The translations under genes and the position numbers were made by a program. Under the pieces are notes generated by a model. It ran no database searches. It worked only from the letters and a program-made list of their open reading frames with translations, and was not told where the DNA came from. 64,000 bases of DNA from positions 124,001-188,000 of the IMG/VR virus record IMGVR_UViG_3300031707_000001, one strand, 5' to 3'. Positions within the stretch are counted from its first letter, which is position 1. Every line of letters begins with the position of its first letter. Shown in pieces: positions 20,103 through 55,850 of this stretch.

Positions 20103-20103
20103 T

Positions 20104-23377: not shown

Positions 23378-23378
23378 C

Positions 23379-27764: not shown

Positions 27765-27788
27765 TATAAAAAATATTTTCGAAATATG

Positions 27789-27817: not shown

Positions 27818-27823
27818 TGTCTC

Positions 27824-27940: not shown

Positions 27941-28012
27941 GGCTTAATATCTCTCGTATTCCAGCTATAACTATTGAAGCAGAAAGTAGCCATTAACCAA
28001 AAGGAGGTTCAA

Positions 28013-39924: not shown

Positions 39925-40319
39925 TGGACGAAGTTACATTACATTTTGTGGATAAGGCGGGCAATGTCAAAGCCGAAGTAGCTGCCGAGATTGCAGAAAC
40001 ACCAGCCGATCGGCGTATGGGGCTTTCCAAGCGAGCATTTCTTCCATCCGGTAGAGGCATGTTTTTTGACAAGGCTGGAGCCTTTTGGATGAAGGATGTC
40101 AACTTTCCATTGGACATCGTTTTCTTGGATAAGCAGGGAACCGTACTTGAGAAACAGCATATGCCACAGGTCGAAGAGCCTACAGCATTGAAGCCACTTT
40201 ATGTGTCTTCGTCCAAGGAAGCTGCACATGCTTTGGAACTGCCGGCTGGCTGGTTTGATCGTCAAGGTTTGGCTGTAGGAATGAAACTTAGGCCAGTAGA
40301 GAGCAGACTGGACAGATGA
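39924..40319 (+). CDS. DUF192-family protein
   Basis: EIAETP..R..GL..R..L....GM.F....FWMKDV.FPLDIVFLD...ALELPAG. Confidence 0.9.
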   Translation: MDEVTLHFVDKAGNVKAEVAAEIAETPADRRMGLSKRAFLPSGRGMFFDKAGAFWMKDVNFPLDIVFLDKQGTVLEKQHMPQVEEPTALKPLYVSSSKEAAHALELPAGWFDRQGLAVGMKLRPVESRLDR

Positions 40320-40337
40320 TAGAAGCTTTGATACTAT
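40309..40337 (+). promoter_or_regulatory. Sigma-70 promoter (extended -10) for the secreted-protein cassette
   Basis: TGGACA-17 nt-TACTAT with TGn. Confidence 0.6.
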
Positions 40338-40376
40338 GGGTTGAAATTGAGTACATTTTGATCAAGGAGAAAACAC

Positions 40377-40766
40377 ATGAATTGGAAGAATGGATTGACC
40401 TCGATAGTCGTTATGTTGGTGGCGTTTTCGATTACAGCATTTGCTCAAACTCCCAGCGGAAACCGGGTGAATAACAGCGAAACGATTTTGATGACCAACA
40501 ATACGGTGAGGATCACGTTGGCCCAGACAACACAACCGGTAAGTCCTGCCCAGGTTGAACTGACGTTCAAGGCTCCGGTAACTGCTACCTTCACCTTCAA
40601 CTATGAGCGTGGGGCTTACACCAATATGGTGATCAACAGGACCCTTACAAACCTGGTAACGTATATTTGGAACTGCCCTCGGGATTTGAAGCTGGTGGGA
40701 AACGATACACTGGTATTCACCAAGTCTGTCAGTGATCGGGCTCAGTTAACGATCAATTGGAAGTAA
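40377..40766 (+). CDS. Small exported beta-rich protein
   Basis: Signal peptide MNWKNGLTSIVVMLVAFSITAFA-Q; AAGGAG RBS. Confidence 0.75.
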   Translation: MNWKNGLTSIVVMLVAFSITAFAQTPSGNRVNNSETILMTNNTVRITLAQTTQPVSPAQVELTFKAPVTATFTFNYERGAYTNMVINRTLTNLVTYIWNCPRDLKLVGNDTLVFTKSVSDRAQLTINWK

Positions 40767-40779
40767 GGAGACAGTATTC

Positions 40780-43068
40780 ATGAAGAAACTGATTCATGTG
40801 TTTTTCGGTTTGTTGTTGGCGGTACTGCCTCTTGCAGCCCAAGAGATTGATAACGGAGCGCCGGTATACGTCGTTGAGATTATCAATGGCGTTCCGTATT
40901 TATCTGGCGCCGGCGGAGGTGGAGGCACCCCGGTCGATCTTACACCATATCTAAAGAAAGACGGTACAATCGCTTATACGGCCGATCAGAACGGCGGCGG
41001 ATTTGGAATTACCAATCTTGGGGCATTGATACCGTTTGGAAGCAATACTGTAAACTTGGGATCGCTGCTACATCCATGGGGAAGCATATATGCAAGCGGG
41101 CATACCATCTATTTGGACGGCATTCCAATGCTTTCGGTATCGAACAGTCAATTAGTTGTAGCATATCCAGTAGCCTCCAGCAATGGAACAACCTACACGA
41201 CAACAGTTGATCTTAGTGGTTTGTCCAATCAAGTTGCAGCCATAGAGGCTCGTACTAACGCCTGGAATACTGGATCCGCTGAAGGCAACTATGCTTCGAA
41301 CTGGATCGGTACGTATGGACCAGTTTTGGCCAGCACAAGTTATGTTGATAATGCTGTGTCCGGATATGCGCCCACCTCATCGATCAATGGAGTCTCTGGG
41401 CGTGTTTCTGCAATCGAAAGCAAAACCAATGACTGGAATACAGCTTATGGTTGGGGCAACCATGCTGTTGCAGGATACGCCGGTACAGGATCTGTGAACG
41501 CCGTTTCGGCGAGAGTTGGTACGATTGAAAGCAAAACCAATGACTGGAATGCTGTCTATTCCTGGATGCAGTCCAATTCTAATGGTTTGAGTTTTGTATT
41601 TTCTCAAACCAACTCGTGGACAGTAGGCGCCTCAGCGGGTAACTATGCATCCAATTGGATCGCAGTCTGGAGTCCAACTCTTGCCAGTACAAACTTTGTT
41701 ACTGATCTTTTGACTGGCTATGCTTCGACCTCAACGGTAAATGCGGTTTCTAGTAGGGTCGGAACCATCGAGGGACAAACTAACGCTTGGAATACAGCTA
41801 CAGCTTATGTAGCAGCAAAGTCGAATAACTGGGATACGGCGTATAACCATCTTTCAACCTTGTTTGCTGGATCGGGTACTACTGGCAATGTAACAAGTGC
41901 CACTGCCAATACCAACCAATACCTTCGTGGCGACGGTACCTGGCAGACTGTTGCAGCCTCAGGGGCTGGCGATGTTTTCAAGGGTAGTAACAATACCTAC
42001 TCTGCCGGAACAACTCAGTCCATGCCATATGCGATTATCAATAACGGATTGGAAGTGTATGGGAACACAATTCATACAAATTGTGGAGTTAGTTTGGGCT
42101 CTACAGATACAACCAAGGCCAAATTTTATGTCAATGGCGAGAGCGGAGCATATACAAACAAGCCTCTTGTCTGGTTCAATAGGAGTGCAGCGGCTACAGG
42201 CCCTATCTTGCAGTGGGGAACCAATGGTGTCCTTCTTGGGAGTATTGATGTGAATGGAAGCGTCTCTGTTCCATCAATAGGTATCTCAAACAATCTTACA
42301 CTCGGTGGGGTTACAGTGAGTTCCTTCTCGACGAACACTCCGATCTTTGCGGATGGCTCCCAGCCATTCAACGCCACTATGAATGCTGGAACTTTCGGAG
42401 TAACGAATCTTGGCACATTGCTTCCATTTGGCAGTAATACCTGTGATCTTGGAAGTGCCGCTCTTCCGTGGAGAAATGCGTATTACGTTTCGCATACGAT
42501 CTATATGGGCGGGTGGCCTATTTCTGTTGACGATGGCACCGGAAAACTCCTTGTACCGGGAGTTCAGTATTCTGCTCCACAATACACTATAAAGTCTGTG
42601 GCCGCTTCTGATATGATGCTTCGTGGTGCCGCTACTGATCCTGCATGGGATGGGCTCAAGGTTCGTATGACCTTCTCTGGGACGAATCTGAACGGGGTGA
42701 GTTTCATTTGCGATCTTCCGCAGTACAGTCCCGAAACCGATATAGTTCCGTTGATCTTGTGGGAAGGAAATGATGTGAATGTTTCCAATGTAATCTGGCA
42801 GATGGATTACATCTGGCGCAATATAGGTGATATTTCTACCTATGGAGATTGGACTACGCTTGCTGTGACTAATGTCAATCCTGCTTTGAAATGGCAATCT
42901 AAGGTATCCCGTTTTCCGACGGTTTCGGGAGCAGGGAAGAATAAGAATTCTGTCATTCAAATCAGACTGCAACGCCGTGGTGACTTGGACGATAACAACG
43001 ATACTGCGAGTCTTCTTTTCTTCGGGCTTAGGTATGCAATCCAAGCCACAGGTGAGGATGCACAATAA
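40780..43068 (+). CDS. Tail-fibre-like protein with a Sec signal peptide
   Basis: MKKLIHVFFGLLLAVLPLAA-Q; fibre motifs YLKKDG...ITNLG, P..SNT.DLGS...W (twice), TAYGWGNHA.AGY, YLRGDGTW. Confidence 0.75.
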   Translation: MKKLIHVFFGLLLAVLPLAAQEIDNGAPVYVVEIINGVPYLSGAGGGGGTPVDLTPYLKKDGTIAYTADQNGGGFGITNLGALIPFGSNTVNLGSLLHPWGSIYASGHTIYLDGIPMLSVSNSQLVVAYPVASSNGTTYTTTVDLSGLSNQVAAIEARTNAWNTGSAEGNYASNWIGTYGPVLASTSYVDNAVSGYAPTSSINGVSGRVSAIESKTNDWNTAYGWGNHAVAGYAGTGSVNAVSARVGTIESKTNDWNAVYSWMQSNSNGLSFVFSQTNSWTVGASAGNYASNWIAVWSPTLASTNFVTDLLTGYASTSTVNAVSSRVGTIEGQTNAWNTATAYVAAKSNNWDTAYNHLSTLFAGSGTTGNVTSATANTNQYLRGDGTWQTVAASGAGDVFKGSNNTYSAGTTQSMPYAIINNGLEVYGNTIHTNCGVSLGSTDTTKAKFYVNGESGAYTNKPLVWFNRSAAATGPILQWGTNGVLLGSIDVNGSVSVPSIGISNNLTLGGVTVSSFSTNTPIFADGSQPFNATMNAGTFGVTNLGTLLPFGSNTCDLGSAALPWRNAYYVSHTIYMGGWPISVDDGTGKLLVPGVQYSAPQYTIKSVAASDMMLRGAATDPAWDGLKVRMTFSGTNLNGVSFICDLPQYSPETDIVPLILWEGNDVNVSNVIWQMDYIWRNIGDISTYGDWTTLAVTNVNPALKWQSKVSRFPTVSGAGKNKNSVIQIRLQRRGDLDDNNDTASLLFFGLRYAIQATGEDAQ
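41416..41550 (+). repeat. 24-bp direct repeat within coding repeats
   Basis: GAAAGCAAAACCAATGACTGGAAT at 41416-41439 and 41527-41550. Confidence 0.85.
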
Positions 43069-46000
43069 TGAGATTTCTAACTTCTGTTGTGATGCTCCTT
43101 GGGCTATCCCTGTGTGCGTCAGCGGTTGATTACACATGGGACGGTGGCAATACTGCTGGTTATCAGTGGACCGCTCCTACCAACTGGAATCTGGACGCTG
43201 GTGCTCCCACTACTACGGCAGACAGGGCAATTTTTAACACTACAGGAACCACTAAGAATCCTACCGTTGATGTAAATATTGCTTTGGATGAATTTGTAGT
43301 TGGTGGAACTACGGGTTGGACGTGGTATCGGATAGGTGATATTACAAGTTTGGATATGCTTACCTACGGAAGCAGTGGAAGTTCCACAATGAATCCCGCT
43401 ATCACCGGGAAACGTCTTCTTGTAACTAACGGTATTCTCACTTTGAATGCTTCCAACAACTTTTCTGATACCGTTACGTTTCTGGCTGGTTCTGTTGTAT
43501 TAGGTACATCAGGTCAGATTGGAACAAATACTCCAATTCATATGGACGGATTTAGTGTATTGACGCTGAATTCTAGTAATAACTGGTATTCTTCTCAAAC
43601 TACTACAGTAGATTCTGTCATTGGCGGAACGGGCACGATAGAGTTGAAGTATAATGGAGCACCCATTCCTGTCTCAACAAATTCGTCTGGTGTTGTATCT
43701 GTTAATCAGGTCTCGTATAGCTATCCTCTTGATCTTGCATCAATTGGTATGATGTATCTCGGTTCCACAAATTTAGGAACCAATACTGCAACCAGTCTTG
43801 GAGTGGGTTCCGATGGAAACTATAGGATAGGCGCAGGTGGTGGAACAATAGCATTTGATTCTGCGGGTAGTGATCTAGGCGTGTTTACAGGAGCATGTAA
43901 TCTTGTTGTTGGAAGAAACGGTGGTGGAGTTAAGTATACAGGAACAGCCGTGCTGTCCGATTCCAATACCTTCTCTGGAACGATAATTGTCAATCGGGGA
44001 AGCACTCTAACAGGGTTGGCAATGACCAACAATAGTGGAGGTAGTCCCTTTGGAGCCACTAATGGAGTAGTCACGCTCAATTCGGGGGTTCTTAAATTGT
44101 CTCGTGGGTCGGCTACTACTATCAGACAACCTGTTGTTAAAGGAGCCATGAATCTTACTGGAGGTTCTACTGTTTATCTGGATGGAAATCATGCCACGGC
44201 AAATGTTCAGATCACTTTCGATTCAATTACGAAAGACCCCATATATGATTCTGCTCTGACAATTCAATATGTCAGTGCTCTTGGAACAAAGGAGAGATTT
44301 TTTGTCAATACTGGGGATTCGTATATCACAAACGATGCTCAGGGCATGATAAACGCTATGTATGTTGGGCTACAGGGAACTACCCTTTATTATCCTCTTA
44401 CCAGAAGTGGAGCATCTTCTCCTTACGAACTATTGACAACAAACTATACTTATACGACAGGGGCCGCTAGTCCATTCTCTAATTCTATACCTACAAGTAT
44501 TGTTTTGGTGTCTAATGCTGGAGGTTATAGTCCAGAACTTATTTACGGCCAAACGATCACGAATTGGGCAACAGCTTTTGCTTGGAATGGTCATTGGAAC
44601 TCGTCTGCTGGTTCAACTATAGTAATTCAAAGTGGTTTATTGATATACGAATATTCAGGTGGTCCTAGCTTCCGGTCCAACTTGGATTTTTCACTTGCAT
44701 CTCAGGGTAGAATAGTTACGATGTCTGGTGGAACCCTTAATGCACTTGGGAATATTACTTCTCCATATCTTGTAAAATCAGGACCGGGAGGACTTAGTCT
44801 GGGTTCGGCAGCTCCGGGACATACGGGGATCAATGGAAAGCTATTAGTTTCTGAAGGTCTTGTGGAATTTGATCAGATTGGAGGAGCCGATTTCTTTTCA
44901 AACATACCTAATGCAACCAATCTAATTTTAACCGGCGGAAGTATAGCTTGTACTGCGGGAAGATGTAGTTTCCAAACAAACATTACTGTCATAATAGGTC
45001 CAACCGGAGGAACTATCACATCTGGTGACTATATGTCATTTTATGGAAAGGTTACTGGTCCCGGTTTGATGTGTTGGAATGGACTTGCCGGTAAAGAGTT
45101 AAGATTTAGGGGTGTGGGTAACGATTGGTCTGGTGGTTTGTATGCTAGTTTAGGGATTGTCACTGTTTATGATGGAAGTAGTTTAGGAAGTGGTCCTATA
45201 AGAATGGCTGCTGGAACTACACTTAATGTCAGAACCAATCTGGATATTTCTTCTCTTCGAGGCAGGGGTGCTGTAGTGATTGGAAATGATGTGGCTACTG
45301 GAACTAAATATCTGACCGTCGGAAGCGGAAACACGGACGATAACTTTCCGGGTGTCATAAGCGATCAAGCATCTACTAGAAATGGATCGTTGATTAAAAC
45401 GGGAACAGGGACTATGACATTATGGGGACCGAATACCTTTACTGGCGGAACAACAATCAATGGGGGAATTCTGGCTGTTACAGGATTCTCCTTGCATGAT
45501 ACGGGTACGGTAACTGTTGCTGGTGGAACTTTGAGTATGATTGATAGTGAGACTGTTGGGAATGTAACTTTGAATTCTGGTTCAATTACTGGAAATAGTA
45601 CATTAACTACTGGAAATTTATATCTCAATCAAGGGACAGTAGATTCTATTCTCTCTACCGCATCTAACTTCGTGAAGAACACTTCGGGAACTGTTACGCT
45701 GAACAAAGCGAATACATTTTCCGGGTCGGCAATCATCACAAACGGATTGTTGCTCGTCCAAGGAAGCATTGGTGCAGGCACAACACTTACAAACTATATG
45801 GGCACACTTGGCGGGACTGGGACTGTGTATCGTCATGTTGAAATGATGCCGGGAAGCTATCTTACACCCGGAGCTTCGATTGGAACGATTACTGTTAGCA
45901 ATTTGAACTTTGAAGTGGGCAGCACTGTGGACTTTGAATTGGCGACAACGAATGCAAGTGACTTTGTTCAAGTCAATGGATTGCTGGGGTTGGGTGGCAA

Positions 46001-46238
46001 TATTCGAGTTGTGCCGTCAACGGGATTCGGATATGGAGTATATCCGCTCTTTGGATATACAACGATCACAACGAATCAAGCACCGAGGATTATCACGCCT
46101 GCCGGGTATGCAGGAACTTTGAGCACTGACGATTCCGCCAAGAAGGTATATTTGACAATAGGTTCTGACGCTCTTCGACCTGTCAAGTCGGGAACGTCTT
46201 TACTTTTGAAATCGGGTAAGATATTGTTGAGTAAGTAG
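43068..46238 (+). CDS. Exported beta-helical adhesin with autotransporter-associated beta-strand repeats, no translocator barrel
   Basis: Signal peptide; TWDGG....W....NW start; LIKTGTGTMTLWGPNTFTGGTTINGG and FVKNTSGTVTLNKANTFSG repeats; GTLGGTG...LTPGASIGT. Confidence 0.85.
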   Translation: MRFLTSVVMLLGLSLCASAVDYTWDGGNTAGYQWTAPTNWNLDAGAPTTTADRAIFNTTGTTKNPTVDVNIALDEFVVGGTTGWTWYRIGDITSLDMLTYGSSGSSTMNPAITGKRLLVTNGILTLNASNNFSDTVTFLAGSVVLGTSGQIGTNTPIHMDGFSVLTLNSSNNWYSSQTTTVDSVIGGTGTIELKYNGAPIPVSTNSSGVVSVNQVSYSYPLDLASIGMMYLGSTNLGTNTATSLGVGSDGNYRIGAGGGTIAFDSAGSDLGVFTGACNLVVGRNGGGVKYTGTAVLSDSNTFSGTIIVNRGSTLTGLAMTNNSGGSPFGATNGVVTLNSGVLKLSRGSATTIRQPVVKGAMNLTGGSTVYLDGNHATANVQITFDSITKDPIYDSALTIQYVSALGTKERFFVNTGDSYITNDAQGMINAMYVGLQGTTLYYPLTRSGASSPYELLTTNYTYTTGAASPFSNSIPTSIVLVSNAGGYSPELIYGQTITNWATAFAWNGHWNSSAGSTIVIQSGLLIYEYSGGPSFRSNLDFSLASQGRIVTMSGGTLNALGNITSPYLVKSGPGGLSLGSAAPGHTGINGKLLVSEGLVEFDQIGGADFFSNIPNATNLILTGGSIACTAGRCSFQTNITVIIGPTGGTITSGDYMSFYGKVTGPGLMCWNGLAGKELRFRGVGNDWSGGLYASLGIVTVYDGSSLGSGPIRMAAGTTLNVRTNLDISSLRGRGAVVIGNDVATGTKYLTVGSGNTDDNFPGVISDQASTRNGSLIKTGTGTMTLWGPNTFTGGTTINGGILAVTGFSLHDTGTVTVAGGTLSMIDSETVGNVTLNSGSITGNSTLTTGNLYLNQGTVDSILSTASNFVKNTSGTVTLNKANTFSGSAIITNGLLLVQGSIGAGTTLTNYMGTLGGTGTVYRHVEMMPGSYLTPGASIGTITVSNLNFEVGSTVDFELATTNASDFVQVNGLLGLGGNIRVVPSTGFGYGVYPLFGYTTITTNQAPRIITPAGYAGTLSTDDSAKKVYLTIGSDALRPVKSGTSLLLKSGKILLSK

Positions 46239-46253
46239 TGAAAGGATAAAGCA

Positions 46254-46412
46254 ATGAGAATTCTGTCTGTTCTGCTCGTAATTGTAATGGGTGCCTTTCT
46301 GATGGGTTGTGCTGGAACTAAATCGGCCGATAGTAAAGCGGGCCCGAAGAGTCCGGCAAAGATGATGGTAAAAGATACACGTCCTCGTCCGCTTCCGGCC
46401 GGCATAAAGTAA
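46254..46412 (+). CDS. 52-aa lipoprotein
   Basis: MRILSVLLVIVMGAFLMG-CAGTK... has a lipobox; AAGGA RBS; not in the ORF track. Confidence 0.75.
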   Translation: MRILSVLLVIVMGAFLMGCAGTKSADSKAGPKSPAKMMVKDTRPRPLPAGIK

Positions 46413-46430
46413 CATCGAATGGGGGTTCTT

Positions 46431-47726
46431 ATGTGGAAATGGTTGCAGAATCTTATTGATCAGATTTCCAAATGGATCAAGCCGAAGCCCACACCAACAC
46501 CTCCGGCGCCAGACAACCCTTCGCAACTCAGAGGTTACGGTATGGTTTGTCATTGGATGACGCTACCTGATTTTATAGCCTTCGCAAAGGCCATAAAGGA
46601 TAGTGGTTGCAACTGTACCTCCATAGAACTGTTCGGCAGGGAAGAGGATAGTTGGATCAACCGCCAGGACTTCTTGAAACAGCAACTGTCTAATCTCCTT
46701 ACTGCGTGTCGAGCCAACGGCATAACGCTATTCGTCAATATGGTAAACTGGGGTAGTGGTAGTTTGACAAGCCAACCTGATACGTGGTTTCAAGGATGGT
46801 TGGATTTCATCAAGCAATTGGGGCCCGACAAATTGATTGTCCAGGCTGCCGCAGAGTGGCATGATGGCAAGGCTGCTGCGTGGTGTCAAATGGCTGAGTC
46901 GACCTTGTCCGGCTTTAAGCTGTCCTGGAATCAAGGATCCAGGCCTTCTACAGCTTCTGCCAAGTACGCTTACATCGACTATCATTCAGCTTCCATAGGT
47001 GATTACGGAGTGTCGAATAAACGCATAATCTGCAACACCGATAGTGGAATACTTACCGAGATGGAGAATGGTGGCATAATGGGGCAGACGTTTATACCTG
47101 AGAAAGTCACACAATTTGCGACTGGCGCTCTGGCCCAGGGCAAGTCTGTCAACTTGTACGGGTACAATCATAAGAGCCTTGATGTCGAAGCAGTAAAGAC
47201 TTTGGGAAAAGTTGGAAATCCTAATCCAACGCCAACTCCGACCCCGAGTCCGGACGGATTTGTCTTTGGACAGAATTGCATTTGGCTGGGAGACATACCT
47301 TGCTCTAAAGACGCACAAGTAGCGCCCAATGCGAAGATACTAACTGCAAATGCTTCAAATACGAGCTATGTCAATCTTACATACGCTTCCGAGGCTAGTC
47401 AGCAGTGGTGGAAGCCTTACGACCAGTTTTGCTACGGACCACACGGGGCTCAATACAAAGCAGCCGACGGTAATTGGTACGCCGGTCGTGCTGATTGGTT
47501 TCCTATACAGTTGAGAAACAAGATTGAGATAGGGAACTATTGGAAGAGTGATACGCCATTTAAGGATCATCCCCCTGTAGTCGGCAATCCTTTCTACTTC
47601 TTTGTGTATTCGTCCGACGGGAAAAATCGATCTACAGCCATACAAGTTGTATGGAAACTGGGATTCTTCCGCTCCATATGGCGGAGATTGAAGACAACGA
47701 ATAAGAAGATGCGAGGTATTAAATGA
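46431..47726 (+). CDS. Putative glycoside-hydrolase-like protein with Pro/Thr linkers
   Basis: TIM-barrel-like alternating pattern (ACRANGITLFVNM...AAEW...YIDYH...NTD), two PT linkers, amphipathic termini. Confidence 0.45.
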   Translation: MWKWLQNLIDQISKWIKPKPTPTPPAPDNPSQLRGYGMVCHWMTLPDFIAFAKAIKDSGCNCTSIELFGREEDSWINRQDFLKQQLSNLLTACRANGITLFVNMVNWGSGSLTSQPDTWFQGWLDFIKQLGPDKLIVQAAAEWHDGKAAAWCQMAESTLSGFKLSWNQGSRPSTASAKYAYIDYHSASIGDYGVSNKRIICNTDSGILTEMENGGIMGQTFIPEKVTQFATGALAQGKSVNLYGYNHKSLDVEAVKTLGKVGNPNPTPTPTPSPDGFVFGQNCIWLGDIPCSKDAQVAPNAKILTANASNTSYVNLTYASEASQQWWKPYDQFCYGPHGAQYKAADGNWYAGRADWFPIQLRNKIEIGNYWKSDTPFKDHPPVVGNPFYFFVYSSDGKNRSTAIQVVWKLGFFRSIWRRLKTTNKKMRGIK

Positions 47727-50700
47727 CTTGGAAAAGGCTTATCGGATTTTTGGCAGGTGTAGCGGTTGCTTCTGTGGCTTTTGCCCAGAGTCAAAATAAC
47801 GTGTTGTCACAACTGGGCGTAAAAGGCGTTACCGATCAGATCTATGGTACGAATCCAGCGCTCTATGCCGGCTATTTGGTTAAGACTGGAACGAACGGGC
47901 TATTCAGTACATCGATGATGTCTACGGATATTGTGCCACGGCGTTGGTTTGAGACAGTTTTTCTGGATAGCGTAAATGGGTTGAATGCAACCAATTCCGG
48001 AACTGCGACCTGTCCGTACAAGACCTTCGCCTACGCCGCTGCTCGAACGACAAACGATACCGCTTTCGTATTCGCTCCCGGGACTTATGCGGGGGATACG
48101 ATTACGAACTCGCATGTACACCACGTAGCGTTGATCGGCTTGGATCCTACCAATACAACCATGACTGGTATATTGAACTTCAACGCCAATCTTATGGCCG
48201 GTACCCAGGACATTTCGGTGGATCTGTATGGTATCAACGTTGATACTGTGCGTCAGTATCAATATGGGTTGTTCAATGTTGGTCTCTACAATAGAGCAAA
48301 GGTAACAAGTCAGATTACAAGACTTTCTACCAATCTCAATAGCTCGTTGACACTTTTCATGGATCCTTCAACTTATTTGGCATCACCGATCACTACGAGC
48401 AACGCAACGATAGTTATCAAGGCTTATGTGCCACAAGGAACAGCCGCAGGACAATTGACGTGTTGGGACGGCGCTAATTGGGCAATCGTAGCTGCTGGCA
48501 CAACGAATCAAGTCCTCTATGGGGGTACTGTTCCGTTTTGGGGAAGTGCGTCGATCGTATACACGAATACAGCTATACCTGGAGACTTTACGCCTGCTAT
48601 CAGCAATAGATATAGCATAGGTTCTCAAACTATGCCCTGGAGCAACGGTTGGTTTGCTACAGGTTTGTATGTGGGCGGGTCGAACGTGTTGAACAGCATT
48701 TACGTGGGTAATTACGCATCCAACTGGATTTCGGTATATGGGTCTGCTCTTGCTTCTACGAATTATGTGAATGCGAGTATCTCCAACATAACGCTTGCTA
48801 CAGTTGTGGCCAACGGAAGCAATGCTTTTTCTTCCGTGGTGGTAGATGGAATACGAACTCCAGATGATGCGCCATATGTAGCTCTTGCTGTAGGCGTTAC
48901 CAATCGAACGCTTAATTATCAAGGAACAGAAGTTGTTAACTGGAGTTTAGGCGGCGTTAATAACGGTTGGCTAATGAAACGTCCTCTTCGTAGTGATTCC
49001 GACGGCGCCCCGAGTTTCGATCCAAACGAACGGGCTTTGATGGGGGCCTGGATCGCAAGTAACAATTTAACCGTGTGTGATTCACTATTTGTCAGCAACA
49101 ACATATCTGAGGCAGGCACTAACCTGGTATTGAAATATGCGTCTGTTCTTGAACCATTAGCCGTTGCAGCCAGTAACCACGCCTTTTATGCTTCTGAAGC
49201 CGGGCATTCCACAAATGCGGACAACGCAATGCAACTCAATTCTATCGGTGCGTCGGCATTTGCTCGGAGAGATACTACCAATACTTTCACTCAGCCACAG
49301 ACTATCAGCATTAATAGCGCTGCAACTATAGTATCAGACGCAACTAACTCCAACTCCAGCGGAGGAGCTTTATACCACATTGCCGGGGATACTGGAGAAT
49401 ATCTGCAACTCGGTGTATTTGGTTCGGCGTTTGCACTTCCAGGTGTTCGCCAACAGGGCTTTATCGGCTGTTCCACAAACATAATCATCGGGCTGGATAT
49501 GGATGTAGCATCTGGTGGAACGAGCGTATTTGATGTCTATACGGGAGGCTATCTTGCGGTTACTCCAACGCTTCGTGTTTCCGGAACCAACATCATGGAA
49601 AACGGGGTAGCATTGGGCAACAAATATGCGCCTAAAAATATAGAAACGTTGCAAACTGTGACAACGAGAGGGAACACTTCCGATCAGGATTTGGCTCTGA
49701 GTGGATCCAAAATTATCGTGGGTGGGTTGATAGGAGGTCCGGGAGGACAAACAACTTGGGGATTAGGTGCGTGGGGTGCAGATTTTGGAGTTCTAAATCC
49801 TTACGGAATTCAAAATCTTGATGCCAAAGCAACGTGGAATTTTGGATATTGCAACGGCTTTCCACCTAACATCTACGCCGCTCAAACTAACCAAGGTTAC
49901 GGATCGCTAAATCTAGGCTATATCAATTGTGCTGTATCTTCGGCTGCTCAGCTAATGACTGGTCGTGGTTCCTTGAACGTAGGTAACCTGGCCAACGGTG
50001 AATATCAAAATACAAGCGGCAACGGAGCGTTAAACGTCGGCGCCAACAACACGTTGACACACGACTATTCTGCTGTCTTCGGCAATGGCCAAGTCTCGTA
50101 TGAGACCAATTCAGTATCTGCTCGCAAGTATTACGAAGCTGGAGCCGCCCTGTCCAACAGGTATGCTGGAATTGCTATTGAAGGATGGACCAACAATTGG
50201 AATATAGGAGCAGCAGAAGGCAACTATGCTTCTAATTGGGTCTATACTTGGGGCCCTGCTTTGGCCACTACGAATTATGTGAATGCTAGTATCTCCAACG
50301 TGACTCTTGCTACAGTTGTGGCAGCGGGAAGTAATGCTTCTGCAGTAATCACCGCATATGGCGTGCGAAATGAAAATGAATCTCCTATGCTGGTCCCATC
50401 AGTTTGCGTAAGTAATCGGACGTTAAACGTTGGCGGTGTTCCATATCTAAAATGGGACAGTAGTTGGTTATACTTTCTCCAGCCCATACGAAGCAACGCA
50501 GATGGCGGAGAGAGCATGGAAGCTAACGATCGTGTCTTGTGGGGCAACTGGGTTGCAACAAACGATTTCGCAGTAGCCGGCACGATTACCGAGGGATCAC
50601 AAACACTGAGTCAGAAGTATGACTCCAAAATACGCCCAGTGGAAGTAAAGACTGACAACTACAACGTGCTTACGAATGATGTCGCAAAAACGTTTGTAAT

Positions 50701-50959
50701 GAATACGGCTTCAAAGACCAATTTCCTGCCATCAGTAGATGCTTCTAATGTGGGTATTTGGTATACCTTCGTGAAGCATAATACCGGCACGTTGACGATA
50801 AAGGCGGCAGGTATCACTCAGATAGCCGACAGCGGACAGGGTGATACGATTTATGATTCTCAGGCTGCCGAAGTCTATGCCACAGTAACGCTCCAACTTG
50901 TCACCAGCACGAACTGGGTAATAACAGGTGCCCACGGAACTTGGACAACCACGGACTAA
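47723..50959 (+). CDS. Tail-fibre-like protein with a Sec signal peptide
   Basis: MTWKRLIGFLAGVAVASVAFA-Q; G....PYKT..YA and PGTY motifs; ETLQTVTTRGN; GNYASNW repeats shared with 40780; C-terminal KTDNY.V...D...LP......G..Y domain. Confidence 0.75.
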   Translation: MTWKRLIGFLAGVAVASVAFAQSQNNVLSQLGVKGVTDQIYGTNPALYAGYLVKTGTNGLFSTSMMSTDIVPRRWFETVFLDSVNGLNATNSGTATCPYKTFAYAAARTTNDTAFVFAPGTYAGDTITNSHVHHVALIGLDPTNTTMTGILNFNANLMAGTQDISVDLYGINVDTVRQYQYGLFNVGLYNRAKVTSQITRLSTNLNSSLTLFMDPSTYLASPITTSNATIVIKAYVPQGTAAGQLTCWDGANWAIVAAGTTNQVLYGGTVPFWGSASIVYTNTAIPGDFTPAISNRYSIGSQTMPWSNGWFATGLYVGGSNVLNSIYVGNYASNWISVYGSALASTNYVNASISNITLATVVANGSNAFSSVVVDGIRTPDDAPYVALAVGVTNRTLNYQGTEVVNWSLGGVNNGWLMKRPLRSDSDGAPSFDPNERALMGAWIASNNLTVCDSLFVSNNISEAGTNLVLKYASVLEPLAVAASNHAFYASEAGHSTNADNAMQLNSIGASAFARRDTTNTFTQPQTISINSAATIVSDATNSNSSGGALYHIAGDTGEYLQLGVFGSAFALPGVRQQGFIGCSTNIIIGLDMDVASGGTSVFDVYTGGYLAVTPTLRVSGTNIMENGVALGNKYAPKNIETLQTVTTRGNTSDQDLALSGSKIIVGGLIGGPGGQTTWGLGAWGADFGVLNPYGIQNLDAKATWNFGYCNGFPPNIYAAQTNQGYGSLNLGYINCAVSSAAQLMTGRGSLNVGNLANGEYQNTSGNGALNVGANNTLTHDYSAVFGNGQVSYETNSVSARKYYEAGAALSNRYAGIAIEGWTNNWNIGAAEGNYASNWVYTWGPALATTNYVNASISNVTLATVVAAGSNASAVITAYGVRNENESPMLVPSVCVSNRTLNVGGVPYLKWDSSWLYFLQPIRSNADGGESMEANDRVLWGNWVATNDFAVAGTITEGSQTLSQKYDSKIRPVEVKTDNYNVLTNDVAKTFVMNTASKTNFLPSVDASNVGIWYTFVKHNTGTLTIKAAGITQIADSGQGDTIYDSQAAEVYATVTLQLVTSTNWVITGAHGTWTTTD

Positions 50960-50969
50960 GGAGACTACG

Positions 50970-51860
50970 ATGCCAGACGTATCAGTAAACAGATTTGGAG
51001 CGGCAAAGGGACTCATAATGTCGGACGTTACACAGACCAATGTTAACTTGAGTTCTTTGTTAAGCTGGATTTCTCAGAACAATAATATAGACCTAAGAGA
51101 TTTCAAAGCAGCTACTAATGTAGTTTTAGGGACTTTGCCAAATAAAATACGTGGTATAGATATAAGTGGTCTACCTTCTTTGACTAGCTTATCTATAACT
51201 TCTTCGGATTCTAATTCCCGACCTTACCTTCGGATAAGAGATTGCATTTCGTTATCTTCTTTTGGTAGTGGTAGTGCAGGATATTTTCGTAGCGTGGATG
51301 CTAGTGGTTGTACATCACTTACCACTCTAACGGCAGTTATTAAATGGCAGGCGGGCGATCCTTATCCTATAGCATTTGCTGGATGTAATGCTCTTACTAA
51401 TTTGGACTTTTATGGTGGAGTAGGGGCTTCTGATTTTGGAGCAATTACTATGGACTTCAGTGCTCTTCCTGCTTTGAGATATATTAACTCAAGAACTGCT
51501 ACTGGCCTTGTGGGGTTTATTGCGCCACCTTGTTCTTCCAATGCGTACTTCAGTTTTTACAACTGCACAAGTTTACTTACTGCTGATCTTTCTTTGGCTA
51601 CAGATTTGACCAATGTAAGTTTTCAACAGTGTTCTGCGTTGACTACTATAACAATTTCTCCGAGCATTACAGCAATTACTTTGGATGCTGCGTTGTGTTA
51701 TCTTTCTGAAGCCTGTGTGAATGACCTTGTAGCCAAGGGTGTAGCCTCTGGATTGAGTAGTCAAACTTTGCATATAGGGGGAGGAAATAACCACGCACTA
51801 ACTGGTCAGGGTATTACGGATAAGGCTACTTTGCAGGGAAGAGGTTGGACAGTTAATTGA
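50970..51860 (+). CDS. Leucine-rich-repeat-like protein
   Basis: Repeats ISGLPSLTSL, ASGCTSLTTL, FAGCNALTNL, FYNCTSLLTA, FQQCSALTTI; AAGGAG RBS. Confidence 0.75.
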   Translation: MPDVSVNRFGAAKGLIMSDVTQTNVNLSSLLSWISQNNNIDLRDFKAATNVVLGTLPNKIRGIDISGLPSLTSLSITSSDSNSRPYLRIRDCISLSSFGSGSAGYFRSVDASGCTSLTTLTAVIKWQAGDPYPIAFAGCNALTNLDFYGGVGASDFGAITMDFSALPALRYINSRTATGLVGFIAPPCSSNAYFSFYNCTSLLTADLSLATDLTNVSFQQCSALTTITISPSITAITLDAALCYLSEACVNDLVAKGVASGLSSQTLHIGGGNNHALTGQGITDKATLQGRGWTVN

Positions 51861-51878
51861 CAAGTTAAAGGAAAACGA

Positions 51879-52265
51879 ATGAAAACAAAAATTCTAGTGT
51901 GGGCGTTAATGGCGTGTTTGGCTACTCCGGCAATTGCGTATGATTGGTTGACAACTATGCAGGCACCGGTGGAGAATCGGCTTCTATCTATTGGTATATG
52001 CTCGTACAGCGAAAGTGCGCATCCTTTAGCTGCAGCCGCTTATTTCAACTTTTGTCCTCTTACTTTCTTCGATGATCATCTTCGTATTGGTGTTGGTATG
52101 CTTGGTGGCTACGATGATGGGGACGTGCTGTTCAAACTTCATACTTCCGTGAGTACTAGGATCTTTGATTCATTGGAGGTCGGTGTGTGGTATGCACCGT
52201 TTTGGGGCTTGTCCCGGTATGAAGATCCATACGGCGTAATGGTTGGATACGTATTCAAACTCTAG
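51879..52265 (+). CDS. Small exported protein, possible outer-membrane beta-barrel (subunit)
   Basis: Signal peptide; alternating amphipathic strands; ends in YGVMVGYVFKL, similar to a beta-signal. Confidence 0.6.
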   Translation: MKTKILVWALMACLATPAIAYDWLTTMQAPVENRLLSIGICSYSESAHPLAAAAYFNFCPLTFFDDHLRIGVGMLGGYDDGDVLFKLHTSVSTRIFDSLEVGVWYAPFWGLSRYEDPYGVMVGYVFKL

Positions 52266-52273
52266 GAGACGCT

Positions 52274-53092
52274 ATGAACTATAGACTTGGTTGGATACGA
52301 GACTTTGCAGACATCAGAGATTTTCACGTTAAACACGAAGAGGTGCTGCCGTACAAGTTGGAAGAAGCACCGTTAGAGCCTGAATGTAAAATTGCAATCC
52401 TGCCGCCCATAAAGAACCAGGACCAACTCGGCAGTTGTACGGCGAACGCCGGCACCTACATGTACGAGACGTTTGCTTTGCAACTCCAAGGCGCCGGTAC
52501 CGTTCCGGCTTTGAGTAGGTTGTTCCTGTACAAAGCTACTCGGAGATTGGAGGGGTCGAAAGGAGACACAGGTGCTCAACTTCGAGATACAATGAAGTCG
52601 TTGGTACTATTTGGACTTCCTCCTGAGTCATATTGGCCGTACGACATCTCGAAGTTTGACAACGATCCTACTGCCTTTGAGTACAGTATGGCTCAAAACT
52701 ACCAGGCTCAGACTTACTACCGGTTGGATCCACAGGGCAAAGATGCAGAAAGCGTTATTGCTTCGATCAAGTTGAACTTAGCTGCTAATCGAGCCTGTAT
52801 ATTCGGCTTTACGGTCTATCACAACTGCATGAATAACGGTAACGGAAACGTAAGGCTGCCCGGGCTCTTTGACTTCGTAGATGGCGGCCATGCCATATGT
52901 GCCGTAGGATATGACGATACTCGGGTTATCGAGGGATCTACAGGGGCCTTCATATTTGCCAATTCCTGGGGTACCGTCTGGGGAGATGCAGGTTTCGGTT
53001 ATCTGCCCTACGATTACGTGCGAAAAGGCTTGGCCACCGACTGGTGGACCATGATGAATGGGGAATGGGTCAATTTGGACGTTTTCAAGTAA
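52274..53092 (+). CDS. Papain-like cysteine protease (C1 family)
   Basis: NQDQLGSCTANA (Q, C), GGHAICAVGYDD (H), ANSWG..WG..G.G (N). Confidence 0.93.
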   Translation: MNYRLGWIRDFADIRDFHVKHEEVLPYKLEEAPLEPECKIAILPPIKNQDQLGSCTANAGTYMYETFALQLQGAGTVPALSRLFLYKATRRLEGSKGDTGAQLRDTMKSLVLFGLPPESYWPYDISKFDNDPTAFEYSMAQNYQAQTYYRLDPQGKDAESVIASIKLNLAANRACIFGFTVYHNCMNNGNGNVRLPGLFDFVDGGHAICAVGYDDTRVIEGSTGAFIFANSWGTVWGDAGFGYLPYDYVRKGLATDWWTMMNGEWVNLDVFK

Positions 53093-55142: not shown

Positions 55143-55170
55143 GGAGACATTAATCCAGAACTGGACCAAT

Positions 55171-55282: not shown

Positions 55283-55480
55283 ATGAACTCAATGATAAGC
55301 AAGTCAGCGACACAATACCTGAGACTACGATATACCCGAGATTTTCTGCGGGTCCTTCCGGACCTTCCCGAGACAGCGATGCCTCGGTACCAGGAGTCAA
55401 TAAGTCTATCGCATCGCAGGGGACAAAAGCGGTTGAGCGTTTGGACGCAATACCGCAAACAACTATTGTGGACGCCATAG
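55283..55480 (+). CDS. Hypothetical protein
   Basis: AGGAG RBS, 65 aa. Confidence 0.5.
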   Translation: MNSMISKSATQYLRLRYTRDFLRVLPDLPETAMPRYQESISLSHRRGQKRLSVWTQYRKQLLWTP

Positions 55481-55609
55481 ATGATTGAGGTAACATTGGC
55501 CGGACTGGCCATCTACACCCTTTACAAGGTGCAGCTTCTGATGGCTAGGGTGGACCACGTCCTGCAGGAGGAGGCCAACAAAAACAATCCTCCTGAAACT
55601 AAACAATAA
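55481..55609 (+). CDS. 42-aa membrane-anchored peptide
   Basis: MIEVTLAGLAIYTLYKVQLLMARVDHVLQEEANKNNPPETKQ; abuts the previous stop; not in the ORF track. Confidence 0.55.
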   Translation: MIEVTLAGLAIYTLYKVQLLMARVDHVLQEEANKNNPPETKQ

Positions 55610-55629
55610 GCAAACAATAAGGGGTACGT

Positions 55630-55824: not shown

Positions 55825-55850
55825 CCATCATTCAATCGAAAGGGAAGACG

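What the first reader, a model, noticed from the sequence alone, without database searches (positions are those of the whole stretch)
40309..53092. Phage cassette of Sec-exported tail-fibre-like proteins, with adhesin, lipoprotein, putative beta-barrel and protease
Seen: behind one promoter, six of nine co-oriented genes have export signals (40377, 40780, 43068, 47723, 51879 and lipoprotein 46254). Two of them are built from classic tail-fibre motifs (TAYGWGNHA.AGY, P..NT.DLGS..W, YLRGDGTW, TLQTVT.RGN). Established: tailed-phage fibres normally fold in the cytoplasm and have no signal peptides. Inference, and my best candidate for an undescribed system: either fibres mature in the periplasm and join virions at lysis, or the phage builds a fibre/adhesin structure on the infected cell surface.
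Basis: partly seen in the sequence, partly recalled or inferred. Interest (0 to 1): 0.85.

Follow-up and report, generated by a model that had tools for sequence, protein, structure and literature searches.

The report
Phage cassette of exported fibre-like proteins
An uncultured 211-kb tailed phage carries a gene block in which the tail-fibre-like proteins and several small partners bear secretion signals, so they are probably sent into the infected cell's envelope rather than built directly into virus particles; the pattern is real and unusual, but its purpose is not settled.

Summary
Window 40377-53092 is a tightly packed, co-oriented nine-gene block between a DNA ligase/DUF192 pair and the large terminase of a 211-kb jumbo phage contig. 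Six products have classical Sec signals: five signal-peptidase-I type and one lipoprotein. Only one of 63 other genes in the window does (Fisher p = 3.6e-6). Each signal-bearing start has a Shine-Dalgarno site, and the signals recur in relatives from independent assemblies. For the g6 N-terminal module, 34 of 40 representative homologues carry a signal peptide or lipoprotein signal. The six without one start at the conserved motif, and one of them lies in a signal-free baseplate/fibre module of a distant relative. A core of fibre-like protein, PATR protein, tiny lipoprotein and C1 peptidase also occurs in a phage with T4-type head genes. The "one promoter" claim is unsupported. The "beta-barrel" call is consistent but unproven.

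Best reading (about 0.45): tail-fibre/tailspike-derived proteins redirected to the infected cell's envelope, each paired with a small exported partner, probably masking or destroying receptors. Main rival (about 0.25): true virion fibres that mature in the periplasm. This is a new variant of phage-encoded envelope proteins. Interest 0.65.

The parts
39924..40319 (+). DUF192 gene. It is the conserved left neighbour of the cassette and has no signal peptide. In relatives it is fused to the ligase.
   Evidence: Pfam PF02643, 81 bits. A ligase-DUF192 pair directly precedes the exported g6-like gene in L035 and L036, with one HNH gene between in L032, and precedes g1/g2-like in L031.
40320..40376 (+). 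57-nt gap before g1, holding an SD (AAGGAG) and weak sigma-70-like hexamers. Promoter status is unproven.
   Evidence: The matches are 9 of 12 and not above the shuffled expectation.
40377..40766 (+). g1: 129-aa exported protein (signal peptide, AFA|Q) with no family match. Small partner encoded directly upstream of g2.
   Evidence: Signal call. A 68%-identical homologue with a signal peptide sits directly upstream of the g2-like gene in L031. No Pfam or PHROG hit.
40780..43068 (+). g2: 762-aa fibre-like protein with a signal peptide (LAA|QE). It is a mosaic: the N-terminus is shared with L031, and residues 243-762 are shared with L030.
   Evidence: Homologues P0005-P0009 all carry signal peptides. 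The distant classical fibres P0010-P0014 do not.
43068..46238 (+). g3: 1056-aa exported PATR beta-strand-repeat protein (ASA|VD). It has no autotransporter barrel and no PEP-CTERM. Its C-terminal ~130 residues and tail are conserved.
   Evidence: PF12951 40.1 bits and TIGR02601 49 bits. The alignment with L030 is. A Verrucomicrobiaceae MAG homologue has a signal peptide, the same N-terminal motif and a PEP-CTERM tail.
46254..46412 (+). g4: 52-aa lipoprotein (lipobox LMG|C) with a proline-rich mature part of 34 residues. Small partner of g3.
   Evidence: A homologue follows the PATR gene in L030 with the same C-terminal RPRP.PAG.K motif. Small lipoproteins also occur in the L027 and L031 cassettes.
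46419..47726 (+). g5: 435-aa protein with no signal peptide, no family match and a Pro/Thr linker. No homologue was found among the loci fetched or the proteins retrieved with other queries; no database search was run with g5 itself.
47723..50959 (+). g6: 1078-aa exported fibre/tailspike-like protein (AFA|QS). It has a conserved N-terminal module (LG.KGVTD motif plus a short right-handed beta-helix) and a variable fibre-like remainder.
50970..51860 (+). g7: about 296-aa protein with no signal peptide and a sub-threshold BspA-type LRR match. The likely start is the ATG at 50970, not the GTG at 50928.
   Evidence: LRR_5 at 23.2 bits against a cut-off of 27.7..
51879..52265 (+). g8: 128-aa exported protein (AIA|YD). 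It is predicted as six long antiparallel strands and is a candidate small or partial outer-membrane barrel. It is always followed by the C1 peptidase.
   Evidence: The g8-g9 adjacency also occurs in L027 and L046.
52274..53092 (+). g9: papain-family (C1A, xylellain-like) cysteine peptidase with no signal peptide. It is the last gene of the cassette.
   Evidence: PF00112 48 bits. PDB 3OIS at E = 2e-31, with the GSC and GGHA motifs aligned. Homologues end the cassettes in L027, L030 and L046.
53394..55169 (-). Large terminase, convergent with the cassette; the right boundary.
   Evidence: phrog_675 at E = 4e-54.

Best explanation
The block is a hypervariable accessory locus of an uncultured jumbo-phage lineage. 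The host is possibly a diderm of the Verrucomicrobiota, on weak evidence.

Shown: six of the nine products cross the inner membrane by the Sec route. g1, g2, g3, g6 and g8 have signal-peptidase-I sites, and g4 is a lipoprotein. g2 and g6 descend from phage tail-fibre/tailspike modules.

Inferred: in this lineage those modules have been given export signals and now work in the envelope of the infected cell, not in the virion. Each large protein is held or handled by a small exported partner encoded next to it: g1 with g2, lipoprotein g4 with the PATR protein g3, and the OMP-like g8 with g6.

The job I think most likely is the one T5 Llp and the Cor proteins do, carried out with receptor-binding hardware. 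The proteins would bind or cut the phage's own receptor or surface polymer from within. That blocks superinfection and stops progeny being wasted on debris, and the gene stays linked to the fibre locus.

g5, g7 and the C1 peptidase g9 have no signal and stay cytoplasmic until lysis. g9 may process envelope or cassette proteins at that point; this is speculation.
For: (1) The export signals are real and selected.
- SD-backed starts.
- 6 of 9 in the cassette against 1 of 63 elsewhere.
- 34 of 40 g6-family representatives carry signals that differ in sequence but keep the n/h/c architecture.
- 5 of 5 close g2 homologues carry them.

(2) Five family members, including the one in the closest relative (terminase 72% identical), are lipoproteins. 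A tether with a median of 34 residues precedes the conserved motif, against about 11 in SPase-I forms and 9 in signal-free forms. A lipid anchor suits a membrane-tethered envelope protein and fits poorly with incorporation into a tail.

(3) Small exported partners are co-inherited. g1-g2 recurs in L031; g3-g4 in L030 with conserved C-termini; and g8 with g6 in L027. The lipoprotein form of g6 in L024 has no g8.

(4) Cellular relatives are secreted proteins. A PEP-CTERM PATR protein occurs in a Verrucomicrobiaceae MAG, and a signal-bearing protein with fibre motifs sits in a housekeeping context in Elusimicrobiales.

(5) The cassette lies away from the signal-free baseplate module at 9.8-24 kb.

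(6) There is precedent for the logic. T5 Llp is a small periplasmic lipoprotein encoded next to the receptor-binding protein gene. It prevents superinfection and adsorption to lysed fragments, and purified pb5 added to cells also blocks infection (PMC9586334). Huge phages are now reported to encode OMPs and signal-bearing substrates for surface display (bioRxiv 10.64898/2026.10.24.761521).
Against: - The g6 module has the conserved-N, variable-C layout of a virion receptor-binding protein and is a fixed feature of the lineage. Its signal-free homologue sits in a relative's fibre module.
- Signal-free fibre-like genes share the operon (L024 715-aa protein).
- No route across the outer membrane was identified.
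- No catalytic site or receptor is known.
- The C-terminal 520 residues of g2 are 52% identical between phages of 32% and 47% GC. That is odd for a host-specific receptor binder.
- All localisation is inferred from sequence alone.
Confidence: 0.45

Rival explanations
1. True virion fibres that mature in the periplasm. g2 and g6 (perhaps also g3) are the phage's receptor-binding fibres. They are exported, folded and trimmed in the periplasm, with g1, g4 and g8 acting as periplasmic chaperones. They dock onto finished particles when holin lesions merge the cytoplasm and periplasm at lysis.
For: - The N-terminal module is conserved and the C-terminus is highly variable, with lengths from about 290 to 2200 aa among full-length representatives (shorter entries may be fragments), as in receptor-binding proteins.
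- g2 is a mosaic, with a lineage-specific N-terminus and an exchangeable C-terminus.
- The signal-free homologue P0046 lies in the fibre module of L033. The baseplate paralogues of L033 are orthologous to window 17940-23377.
- The g6-like gene holds a fixed position across the lineage.
- Fold matches, though weak, are to tailspikes and phage fibres.
- No other obvious long fibre gene was recognised in the window.
Against: - Lipoprotein variants would be covalently anchored to a membrane.
- An OMP-like protein and a lipoprotein are odd fibre chaperones.
- The exported proteins are poor in cysteine, so disulfide formation is not the reason for export.
- Possible partner proteins g5 and g7 are not exported.
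- I found no precedent in tailed phages.
Confidence: 0.25
2. Exit or lysis toolkit. The exported beta-helix proteins strip capsule, EPS or S-layer from within. The small Pro-rich lipoprotein and the OMP-like protein, together with the cytoplasmic C1 peptidase, help breach the outer layers at lysis. This would be a spanin-like or depolymerase-like role.
For: - g4 resembles o-spanins in size and proline content.
- The g6 N-terminal domain is a short right-handed beta-helix, as in depolymerases, and four family members match DUF1565.
- The signal-free peptidase would reach the envelope only after holin action, like a canonical endolysin. It always ends the cassette.
- The locus adjoins the terminase, and small membrane proteins lie on the terminase's far side.
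Against: - No i-spanin partner is present. The neighbouring genes lack an N-terminal membrane anchor.
- No catalytic motif or glycoside hydrolase/lyase family match was found.
- Most of g2 and g6 is fibre-like rather than enzyme-like.
- C1A peptidases are not known lysis enzymes (my own knowledge).
Confidence: 0.12
3. Adhesion or host-conversion cassette. The genes were captured from, or copy, host surface proteins (PATR, LRR and fibre-like adhesins). They make the infected cell stick to particles or to neighbouring hosts.
For: - g3 shares its N-terminal motif with a PEP-CTERM surface protein of a Verrucomicrobiaceae MAG.
- g7 has a BspA-type LRR hint.
- The core module moves between unrelated phage backbones.
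- Sortase-based surface display has been proposed for huge phages.
Against: - No outer-membrane translocation signal is present. g3 lacks both a PEP-CTERM tail and a barrel.
- g7 has no signal peptide.
- g6 is a core gene of the lineage, not a sporadic one.
Confidence: 0.1
4. Sec-exported polymorphic-toxin or bacteriocin-like proteins that use fibre repeats as a stalk and carry variable C-terminal killing domains.
For: Cellular polymorphic toxins combine signal peptides with tail-fibre repeats and variable C-termini (PMC3482391). The g6 family has just such variable C-termini.
Against: - No toxin, pre-toxin or HINT domain appears in g2 or g6 or across the family.
- The C-terminus of g2 is conserved, not polymorphic.
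- No typical small immunity gene follows.
Confidence: 0.04
5. Artefact: wrong start codons or chimeric assembly with host DNA.
For: None found.
Against: - SD sites occur only at the signal-bearing starts.
- The signals are conserved in homologues from at least ten independent assemblies.
- Phage genes flank both sides, and GC content is uniform.
Confidence: 0.02

Closest known systems
T5 Llp and Cor-type superinfection-exclusion lipoproteins encoded next to receptor-binding protein genes
   Same: They are phage-encoded, exported by Sec/Lol and act in the infected cell's envelope. The genes are linked to the fibre or receptor-binding locus. They protect against superinfection and against loss of progeny on debris (PMC9586334). 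g4 is a lipoprotein of similar size.
   Different: Here the exported proteins include very large proteins that are themselves fibre- or tailspike-derived. No sequence relation to Llp or Cor was tested or seen. The function is untested.
Lambda Lom and Bor (outer-membrane barrel and lipoprotein morons in or near the tail-fibre region)
   Same: A small signal-bearing beta-rich protein and a lipoprotein sit beside fibre genes. Fold matches of g8 include Ail (Ail/Lom family membership from my own knowledge).
   Different: g8 is predicted with six strands, not eight, and matches weakly. This phage shows no sign of lysogeny. The role of Lom and Bor is from my own knowledge.
Outer-membrane proteins and sortase-B surface-display modules of huge phages (bioRxiv 10.64898/2026.10.24.761521)
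   Same: Jumbo phages encode signal-bearing envelope proteins. These include six-stranded partial barrels predicted to dimerise, and substrates proposed to be displayed on the host surface.
   Different: That work does not mention tail fibres ('tail fib' has 0 occurrences). The present case has no sortase and concerns fibre- or tailspike-derived proteins in a probable diderm host.
Verrucomicrobial PATR / PEP-CTERM surface proteins and autotransporter passengers
   Same: g3 has PATR repeats above threshold and the same N-terminal motif after the signal peptide as a Verrucomicrobiaceae MAG protein.
   Different: g3 has neither a PEP-CTERM tail nor a barrel domain. Instead it has a conserved C-terminal tail and a companion lipoprotein.
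Classical tail fibres and tailspikes of tailed phages
   Same: They share motifs, a conserved N-terminus with a variable C-terminus, a beta-helix domain and mosaic exchange. A signal-free homologue lies in a fibre module.
   Different: Classical fibres have no signal peptide (0 of 14 here) and fold in the cytoplasm.
Filamentous-phage adsorption protein pIII
   Same: A receptor-binding protein with a Sec signal that joins the particle at the membrane (my own knowledge).
   Different: It belongs to non-tailed phages that assemble by extrusion. There is no homology.
Streptococcus mitis phage SM1 PblA/PblB
   Same: Fibre-like phage proteins that end up on bacterial surfaces and act as adhesins (my own knowledge).
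   Different: They have no signal peptide, are released by lysis and occur in a monoderm host.
Rz1-type o-spanins
   Same: g4 is a tiny proline-rich lipoprotein.
   Different: There is no adjacent or embedded i-spanin with an N-terminal membrane anchor. g4 is co-inherited with the PATR gene instead.

Membership tests
Sec (SPase I) signal peptide | A positively charged n-region, a hydrophobic h-region of 7-15 residues and a small-x-small site 15-35 residues from the start | tested here: met
   g1, g2, g3, g6 and g8 meet it by a rule-based script and by eye. The feature is conserved in homologues. It was not run through SignalP or DeepTMHMM, which were unavailable.
Sec (SPase I) signal peptide | Actual translocation and cleavage | not testable with these tools
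   Needs PhoA or Bla fusions, or N-terminal proteomics.
Bacterial lipoprotein (SPase II) | A lipobox [LVI][ASTVI][GAS]C after an h-region | tested here: met
   g4 has LMG|C at residue 19. Its homologue in L030 has FLG|C. Lipoprotein forms of g6 include P0019 (L024), P0027, P0043 and P0051.
PATR (autotransporter-associated beta-strand repeat) proteins | PF12951 / TIGR02601 repeats above the curated cut-off | tested here: met
   g3 scores 40.1 bits against 27, and 49 bits against 19.85.
Classical (type Va) autotransporter | A C-terminal 12-stranded translocator barrel domain | tested here: not met
   No barrel domain appears in g3 by Pfam or NCBIfam. The protein ends in a short conserved tail.
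PEP-CTERM sorted proteins | A C-terminal PEP motif, a hydrophobic helix and a basic tail | tested here: not met
   Present in the Verrucomicrobiaceae MAG homologue but absent from g3.
Peptidase C1 (papain family) | The Pfam PF00112 domain with catalytic Cys and His | tested here: met
   g9 scores 48 bits against 20.7. The alignment to 3OIS (E = 2e-31) shows GSCTANA and GGHA conserved.
Tailed-phage tail fibre / tailspike | Sequence or fold relation to fibre or tailspike modules | tested here: met
   Motif matches to long fibre ORFs in other viral contigs. g6 has a homologue in the fibre module of L033. The beta-helix model best matches the CBA120 TSP1 tailspike and phage 7-7-1 fibres, but weakly, at E >= 0.04.
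Tailed-phage tail fibre / tailspike | Presence in the virion | not testable with these tools
   There is no cultured relative. tblastn of g2 against 50,697 phage records found nothing.
Tailed-phage tail fibre / tailspike | Cytoplasmic synthesis, meaning no export signal | tested here: not met
   g2 and g6 and most of their close homologues carry signals.
Small outer-membrane beta-barrel (OmpX / Ail / Lom / OmpA-N type, or six-stranded DUF680 type) | A signal peptide, a closed or oligomeric transmembrane beta-barrel and a C-terminal aromatic beta-signal | tested here: inconclusive
   g8 has a signal peptide. The AF2 model (pLDDT 77) has six long antiparallel strands. Foldseek best hits are OMP barrels and phage 'OMP beta-barrel' proteins, but at E = 0.014-0.1 and TM about 0.4. 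Six of seven homologues have Phe as the last or next-to-last residue; the window protein ends in Leu. No Pfam hit.
Two-component spanin | An o-spanin lipoprotein paired with an adjacent or overlapping i-spanin that has an N-terminal membrane anchor | tested here: not met
   g4 looks like an o-spanin, but g3 has a cleavable signal and g5 has no hydrophobic N-terminus.
BspA-type LRR surface protein (g7) | The LRR_5 domain above the cut-off, plus an export signal | tested here: not met
   23.2 bits against 27.7. No signal at either candidate start.
Known anti-phage defence systems | A match to PADLOC models | tested here: not met
   No hit for any cassette protein.

The most novel reading that the evidence does not exclude
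A lineage of tailed jumbo phages routes its real receptor-binding fibres through the Sec pathway. Either the fibres mature in the periplasm and are mounted on particles only when lysis merges the compartments, or the infected cell displays phage fibres on its own envelope and so becomes a fibre-bearing 'virocell' that binds receptors or neighbouring cells. Either outcome would be a step in tailed-phage morphogenesis or spread that has not been described.
Probability: 0.25. Interest if true: 0.9.

Novelty: new variant of a known kind. Interest (0 to 1): 0.65.

Why it matters
Tail fibres are the textbook case of phage proteins made and assembled in the cytoplasm. Here a fibre/tailspike module is found in three states across one family: signal-free (one such copy lies in a fibre module), fused to a cleavable signal peptide, and fused to a lipoprotein anchor with a tether. 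That gives a natural experiment on how receptor-binding hardware is reused.

If the exported forms mask or destroy receptors, exclusion systems would extend from tiny lipoproteins to whole fibre-derived proteins. It would also explain why such genes stay in fibre loci. If they are virion parts, tailed-phage assembly has a periplasmic branch.

It also adds a diderm, fibre-based case to the recent report that huge phages target the host envelope. Finally, it gives a simple screen for virome annotation: fibre motifs plus a signal peptide.

Tried and rejected
- tblastn of g2 against 50,697 phage records found no match. The terminase has only relatives below 30% identity, so there is no cultured relative.
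- Sequence search of g2, g5 and g6 against PDB found nothing useful.
- Pfam, PHROGs and NCBIfam gave nothing for g1, g5, g6 and g8, and for g2 only a weak match to a PHROG of unknown function.
- PADLOC found nothing.
- The promoter/terminator scan was not above the shuffled expectation, so I dropped "one promoter".
- The metagenome scan with the g3 C-terminus found only the source contig and two weak partial matches. The module is rare, or the pattern search is too strict.
- The genome scan with g3 gave a single Verrucomicrobiaceae MAG hit, which is only a weak host clue.
- Disulfide formation as the reason for export is rejected. g2, g3 and g6 have 3-7 cysteines per 760-1080 residues.
- I guessed that the 454-aa signal-bearing protein of L024 is a glycoside hydrolase. 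Pfam does not support this.
- Spanin, classical autotransporter, PEP-CTERM and polymorphic-toxin readings each fail a defining feature (see the membership table).
- Shared receptor-binding domains between exported and signal-free fibre-like proteins of one genome: none found.
- Context look-ups for two more signal-free family members were uninformative because the contigs were short.

Full report
WHAT THE WINDOW IS

The window is bases 124001-188000 of IMG/VR contig IMGVR_UViG_3300031707_000001 (210.7 kb). The same genome occurs as a 211.6-kb JGI contig. It is a tailed jumbo phage, with these recognisable genes:
- a large terminase at 53394-55169 on the minus strand (phrog_675, E = 4e-54);
- a gp6-like baseplate wedge at 9813-11474;
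- an ATP-dependent ligase at 38170-39924;
- SbcCD-like nucleases, an RNase H and HNH endonucleases;
- its own sigma-factor-like gene, a GIY-YIG/NUMOD3 homing endonuclease and a TnpB gene.

No cultured phage is close. The best terminase identity is 29%, and the fibre-like g2 has no tblastn match in 50,697 phage records.

CHECKING THE OBSERVATION

From 40377 to 53092 there are nine co-oriented genes, separated by -4 to +18 nt. I call them g1 to g9.

A rule-based scan of 72 greedily called ORFs (n-region charge, h-region hydropathy, -3/-1 rule, lipobox) flagged signals only in g1, g2, g3, g4 (lipoprotein), g6 and g8. When every in-frame start in the first 60 codons was allowed, one more convincing case appeared outside the cassette. 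It starts at the ATG at 28013, which is preceded by AAGGAGG. That gives 6 of 9 against 1 of 63, Fisher p = 3.6e-6.

The first ATG of each signal-bearing gene has a 4-5 nt SD core at normal spacing, and none of the downstream in-frame starts has one. g2 and g3 have no start codon after the signal region in the first 45 codons. So the escape route "true starts lie downstream" is closed.

The fibre motifs are there. g2 residues 206-262 match long ORFs in about 20 other viral contigs, and none of the 14 complete ORFs among them has a signal peptide.

Family matches are as follows:
- g3 has PATR repeats above threshold.
- g9 is a papain-family peptidase. Its closest solved relative is the cysteine protease of PDB entry 3OIS (xylellain, by my recollection), and the catalytic Cys and His motifs align.
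- g7 has only a sub-threshold LRR hint.

The sigma-70 scan gives 9-of-12 matches at 40309 and 40328. The 19-kb region holds fewer promoter-like sites than its shuffles, and the scan lists no terminator-like site on the + strand between 37316 and 40376. "One promoter" is therefore not supported.

THE SIGNALS ARE A LINEAGE TRAIT

*g6 homologues in relatives*
- In L024 (terminase 72% identical), the g6 homologue next to the terminase is a lipoprotein with lipobox LTG|C. It is preceded by a 454-aa protein with a signal peptide.
- L027 has the order: PATR-like gene, g6-like gene (signal), 51-aa lipoprotein, 66-aa gene, g8-like gene (signal), C1 peptidase, terminase.
- L032, L035, L036 and L039 are progressively more distant. 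Ligase identity is about 51% in L035 and L036. L032, L035 and L036 keep the order ligase, DUF192, signal-bearing g6-like gene, with one HNH gene between DUF192 and the g6-like gene in L032. L039 keeps the upstream DUF6582-like gene and a signal-bearing g6-like gene preceded by a small signal-bearing gene. In L032 six or seven of the nine genes from g6 onward have export signals.

*The g6 N-terminal module across the protein library*
A search of 1.84 billion representative proteins with g6 residues 1-340 found 62 relatives. Forty of them match from their own N-terminus. Of those 40:
- 27 have SPase-I signals;
- 5 have lipoprotein signals;
- 2 more look like signals by eye;
- 6 have none and begin within a few residues of the conserved LG.KGVTD motif.

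The distance from the predicted cleavage site to that motif has a median of 11 residues in SPase-I forms. In signal-free forms the distance from Met1 has a median of 9. Lipoprotein forms have a median of 34, which amounts to a tether. The signal sequences share no sequence conservation, only the usual n/h/c architecture. That is the expected signature of a functional signal.

*g2 homologues*
The five closest homologues all have signals, and the five distant classical fibres do not.

A MOBILE CORE AND PAIRED PARTNERS

L030 is a 32%-GC phage contig that encodes T4-type portal, prohead protease and Gp23-type capsid proteins. It carries the following genes in this order:
- a g2-like protein with a signal, 52% identical over 520 residues;
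- a PATR protein with a signal, whose conserved C-terminal ~130 residues end in VKSGTSLL...;
- a 55-aa lipoprotein with the same C-terminal RPRP.PAG.K motif as g4;
- a C1 peptidase.

Each large exported protein thus travels with a small exported one:
- g1 with g2, also in L031 at 68% identity;
- g4 with g3, also in L030;
- g8 with g6, also in L027. g8 is always followed by the C1 peptidase, as also seen in L046, where the peptidase is 69% identical to g9.

The lipoprotein form of g6 in L024 has no g8. That is suggestive, but it rests on three cases.

STRUCTURE

The AF2 model of g6 residues 1-340 used 38 sequences and reached mean pLDDT 80. It shows an N-terminal helix (the signal), a small N-terminal element and a short right-handed beta-helix at residues 77-275. 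The best PDB matches are the CBA120 TSP1 tailspike, Agrobacterium phage 7-7-1 fibres and polysaccharide lyases or esterases. All are weak, at E >= 0.04. Four family members match DUF1565.

The g8 model used 7 sequences and reached pLDDT 77. It shows the signal helix followed by six long antiparallel strands. The best matches are small outer-membrane barrels (OprF-N, Ail, OmpA, NspA) and phage proteins named as OMP beta-barrels or DUF680, at E = 0.014-0.3 and TM about 0.4. "Putative beta-barrel" is reasonable but unproven. A 2026 preprint reports six-stranded partial barrels in huge phages that are predicted to dimerise.

ORIGIN OF THE MODULES

The signal-free family member P0046 lies in L033, a 176-kb contig. 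Its five baseplate paralogues, which share an N-terminal W.N.N..R.FPF motif, are orthologous to window 17940-24155. It sits among other signal-free fibre genes. So g6 descends from, or shares ancestry with, a real fibre or tailspike of this wider group.

Cellular secreted relatives also exist. The only genome hit of g3 is a Verrucomicrobiaceae MAG protein with a signal peptide, the same AVDYTWDGGN start and a PEP-CTERM tail. A signal-bearing protein with g2 motifs sits among housekeeping genes in an Elusimicrobiales MAG. Cellular polymorphic toxins also use signal peptides with tail-fibre repeats (PMC3482391).

HOW IT MOST LIKELY WORKS

Shown: export signals on six products, fibre/tailspike ancestry of g2 and g6, conserved pairing with small exported proteins, and conservation across a lineage.

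Inferred: the site of action. I favour action in the infected cell's envelope (confidence about 0.45), for four reasons:
- lipid-anchored variants with tethers make sense for envelope proteins and not for tail parts;
- the partners are a lipoprotein and an OMP-like protein;
- cellular homologues are secreted proteins;
- known exported phage proteins fall into the exclusion, lysis or conversion classes.

Linkage of an exclusion gene to the receptor-binding locus has a clear precedent in T5. There the periplasmic lipoprotein Llp, encoded next to pb5, blocks FhuA and prevents both superinfection and adsorption to lysed fragments. Purified pb5 added to cells also blocks infection (PMC9586334). A fibre-derived protein exported into the envelope could do the same job by binding or cutting the receptor polymer from within.

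Three things support it. The family has the layout of a receptor-binding protein, it holds a fixed place in the lineage, and it has the signal-free homologue in L033. Lesser rivals are an exit or lysis toolkit (0.12), an adhesion or conversion cassette (0.10), a toxin-like system (0.04) and artefact (0.02).

COMPARISON WITH WHAT IS KNOWN

Five full-text searches found no report of tailed-phage fibres or receptor-binding proteins with Sec or lipoprotein signals.

The nearest published idea is the October 2026 preprint on huge-phage envelope proteins, which covers OMPs, PspA and sortase B with signal-bearing substrates. It does not mention tail fibres.

I therefore class this as a new variant of a known kind, phage-encoded envelope proteins, and not as categorically new. 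Export across the inner membrane is ordinary biology, and the function is not established.

LIMITS
- No dedicated signal-peptide predictor, multimer modelling or expression data were available.
- The host is unknown. Verrucomicrobiota is only hinted at.
- The family is rare in the collections searched.
- Several co-occurrence arguments rest on two or three loci.

Noticed in passing
window 19050-20102 (+), with upstream gap 18867-19049: A TnpB/IS605 OrfB-type gene (Cas12f1-like TNB at 69.6 bits, OrfB_IS605) is inserted between baseplate paralogues that are contiguous in L033. A near-consensus TTGACA...TAGACT promoter-like site lies upstream. A TnpB-like ORF also occurs in relative L039 at 4330-5379 (by its N-terminal sequence only).
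   Followed up: partly
window 17940-24155 (+): Five tandem paralogues share an N-terminal W.N.N..R.YPF motif: 17940-18866, 20104-21552, 21549-22250, 22250-23377 and 23328-24155. They are orthologous, in order, to five genes of L033. They are probably baseplate or fibre-socket proteins; no family match was found for the four that were scanned (23328-24155 was not).
   Followed up: partly
window 28013-28687 (+), with upstream gap 27765-27973: This is the only convincing signal-peptide protein outside the cassette (VFA|QT, SD AAGGAGG), and it has no family match. It lies downstream of a strong sigma-70-like promoter (TTGACA-17-GATACA, by eye; the region was not scanned) and a GC-rich hairpin.
   Followed up: partly
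window 13673-14353 (+): A GIY-YIG plus NUMOD3 homing endonuclease sits inside the baseplate module. HNH / endonuclease VII-like genes lie at 37355-38173 and 57734-58360.
   Followed up: yes
window 8222-8920 (+): A phage-encoded sigma-70-family protein (regions 3 and 4) lies within the structural region. Phage promoters may therefore not follow the host consensus, which limits any promoter scan.
   Followed up: no
window 27129-27764, 30346-31230 (+), 31151-31915 (-); L024 11850-13175; L030 15156-18815: Methyltransferase and glycosyltransferase genes (weak GT9, sub-threshold GT2, and GT1 in L030) recur near the exported-protein cassettes in this window and in relatives. They may modify surface glycans or glycosylate proteins.
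   Followed up: partly
L035 2748-5789 and L036 7302-10019, compared with window 38170-40319: In relatives the ligase (LigD_N) and DUF192 are one fused protein, with an added Peptidase_C39 domain in L035. In the window they are separate adjacent genes. DUF192 therefore seems tied to the ligase, not to the cassette.
   Followed up: partly
L024 14290-16437 (-): A 715-aa fibre-like protein with 56 cysteines and no signal peptide lies directly downstream of the lipoprotein form of g6. It is an oddly cysteine-rich cytoplasmic protein in the same operon.
   Followed up: no
window 55463-56249: Small membrane proteins of 64-132 aa with hydrophobic N-termini lie on the far side of the terminase. Similar ones occur in L024 at 8790-9703. 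They are possible holin-type lysis genes.
   Followed up: no
window 46145-46238 and L030 13740-13827; window 46380-46412: The C-terminal tail of the PATR protein (VKSGTSLL...K.LLS) and the C-terminus of the following lipoprotein (RPRP.PAG.K) are both conserved between phages of 47% and 32% GC. This suggests a direct contact between the two proteins.
   Followed up: partly
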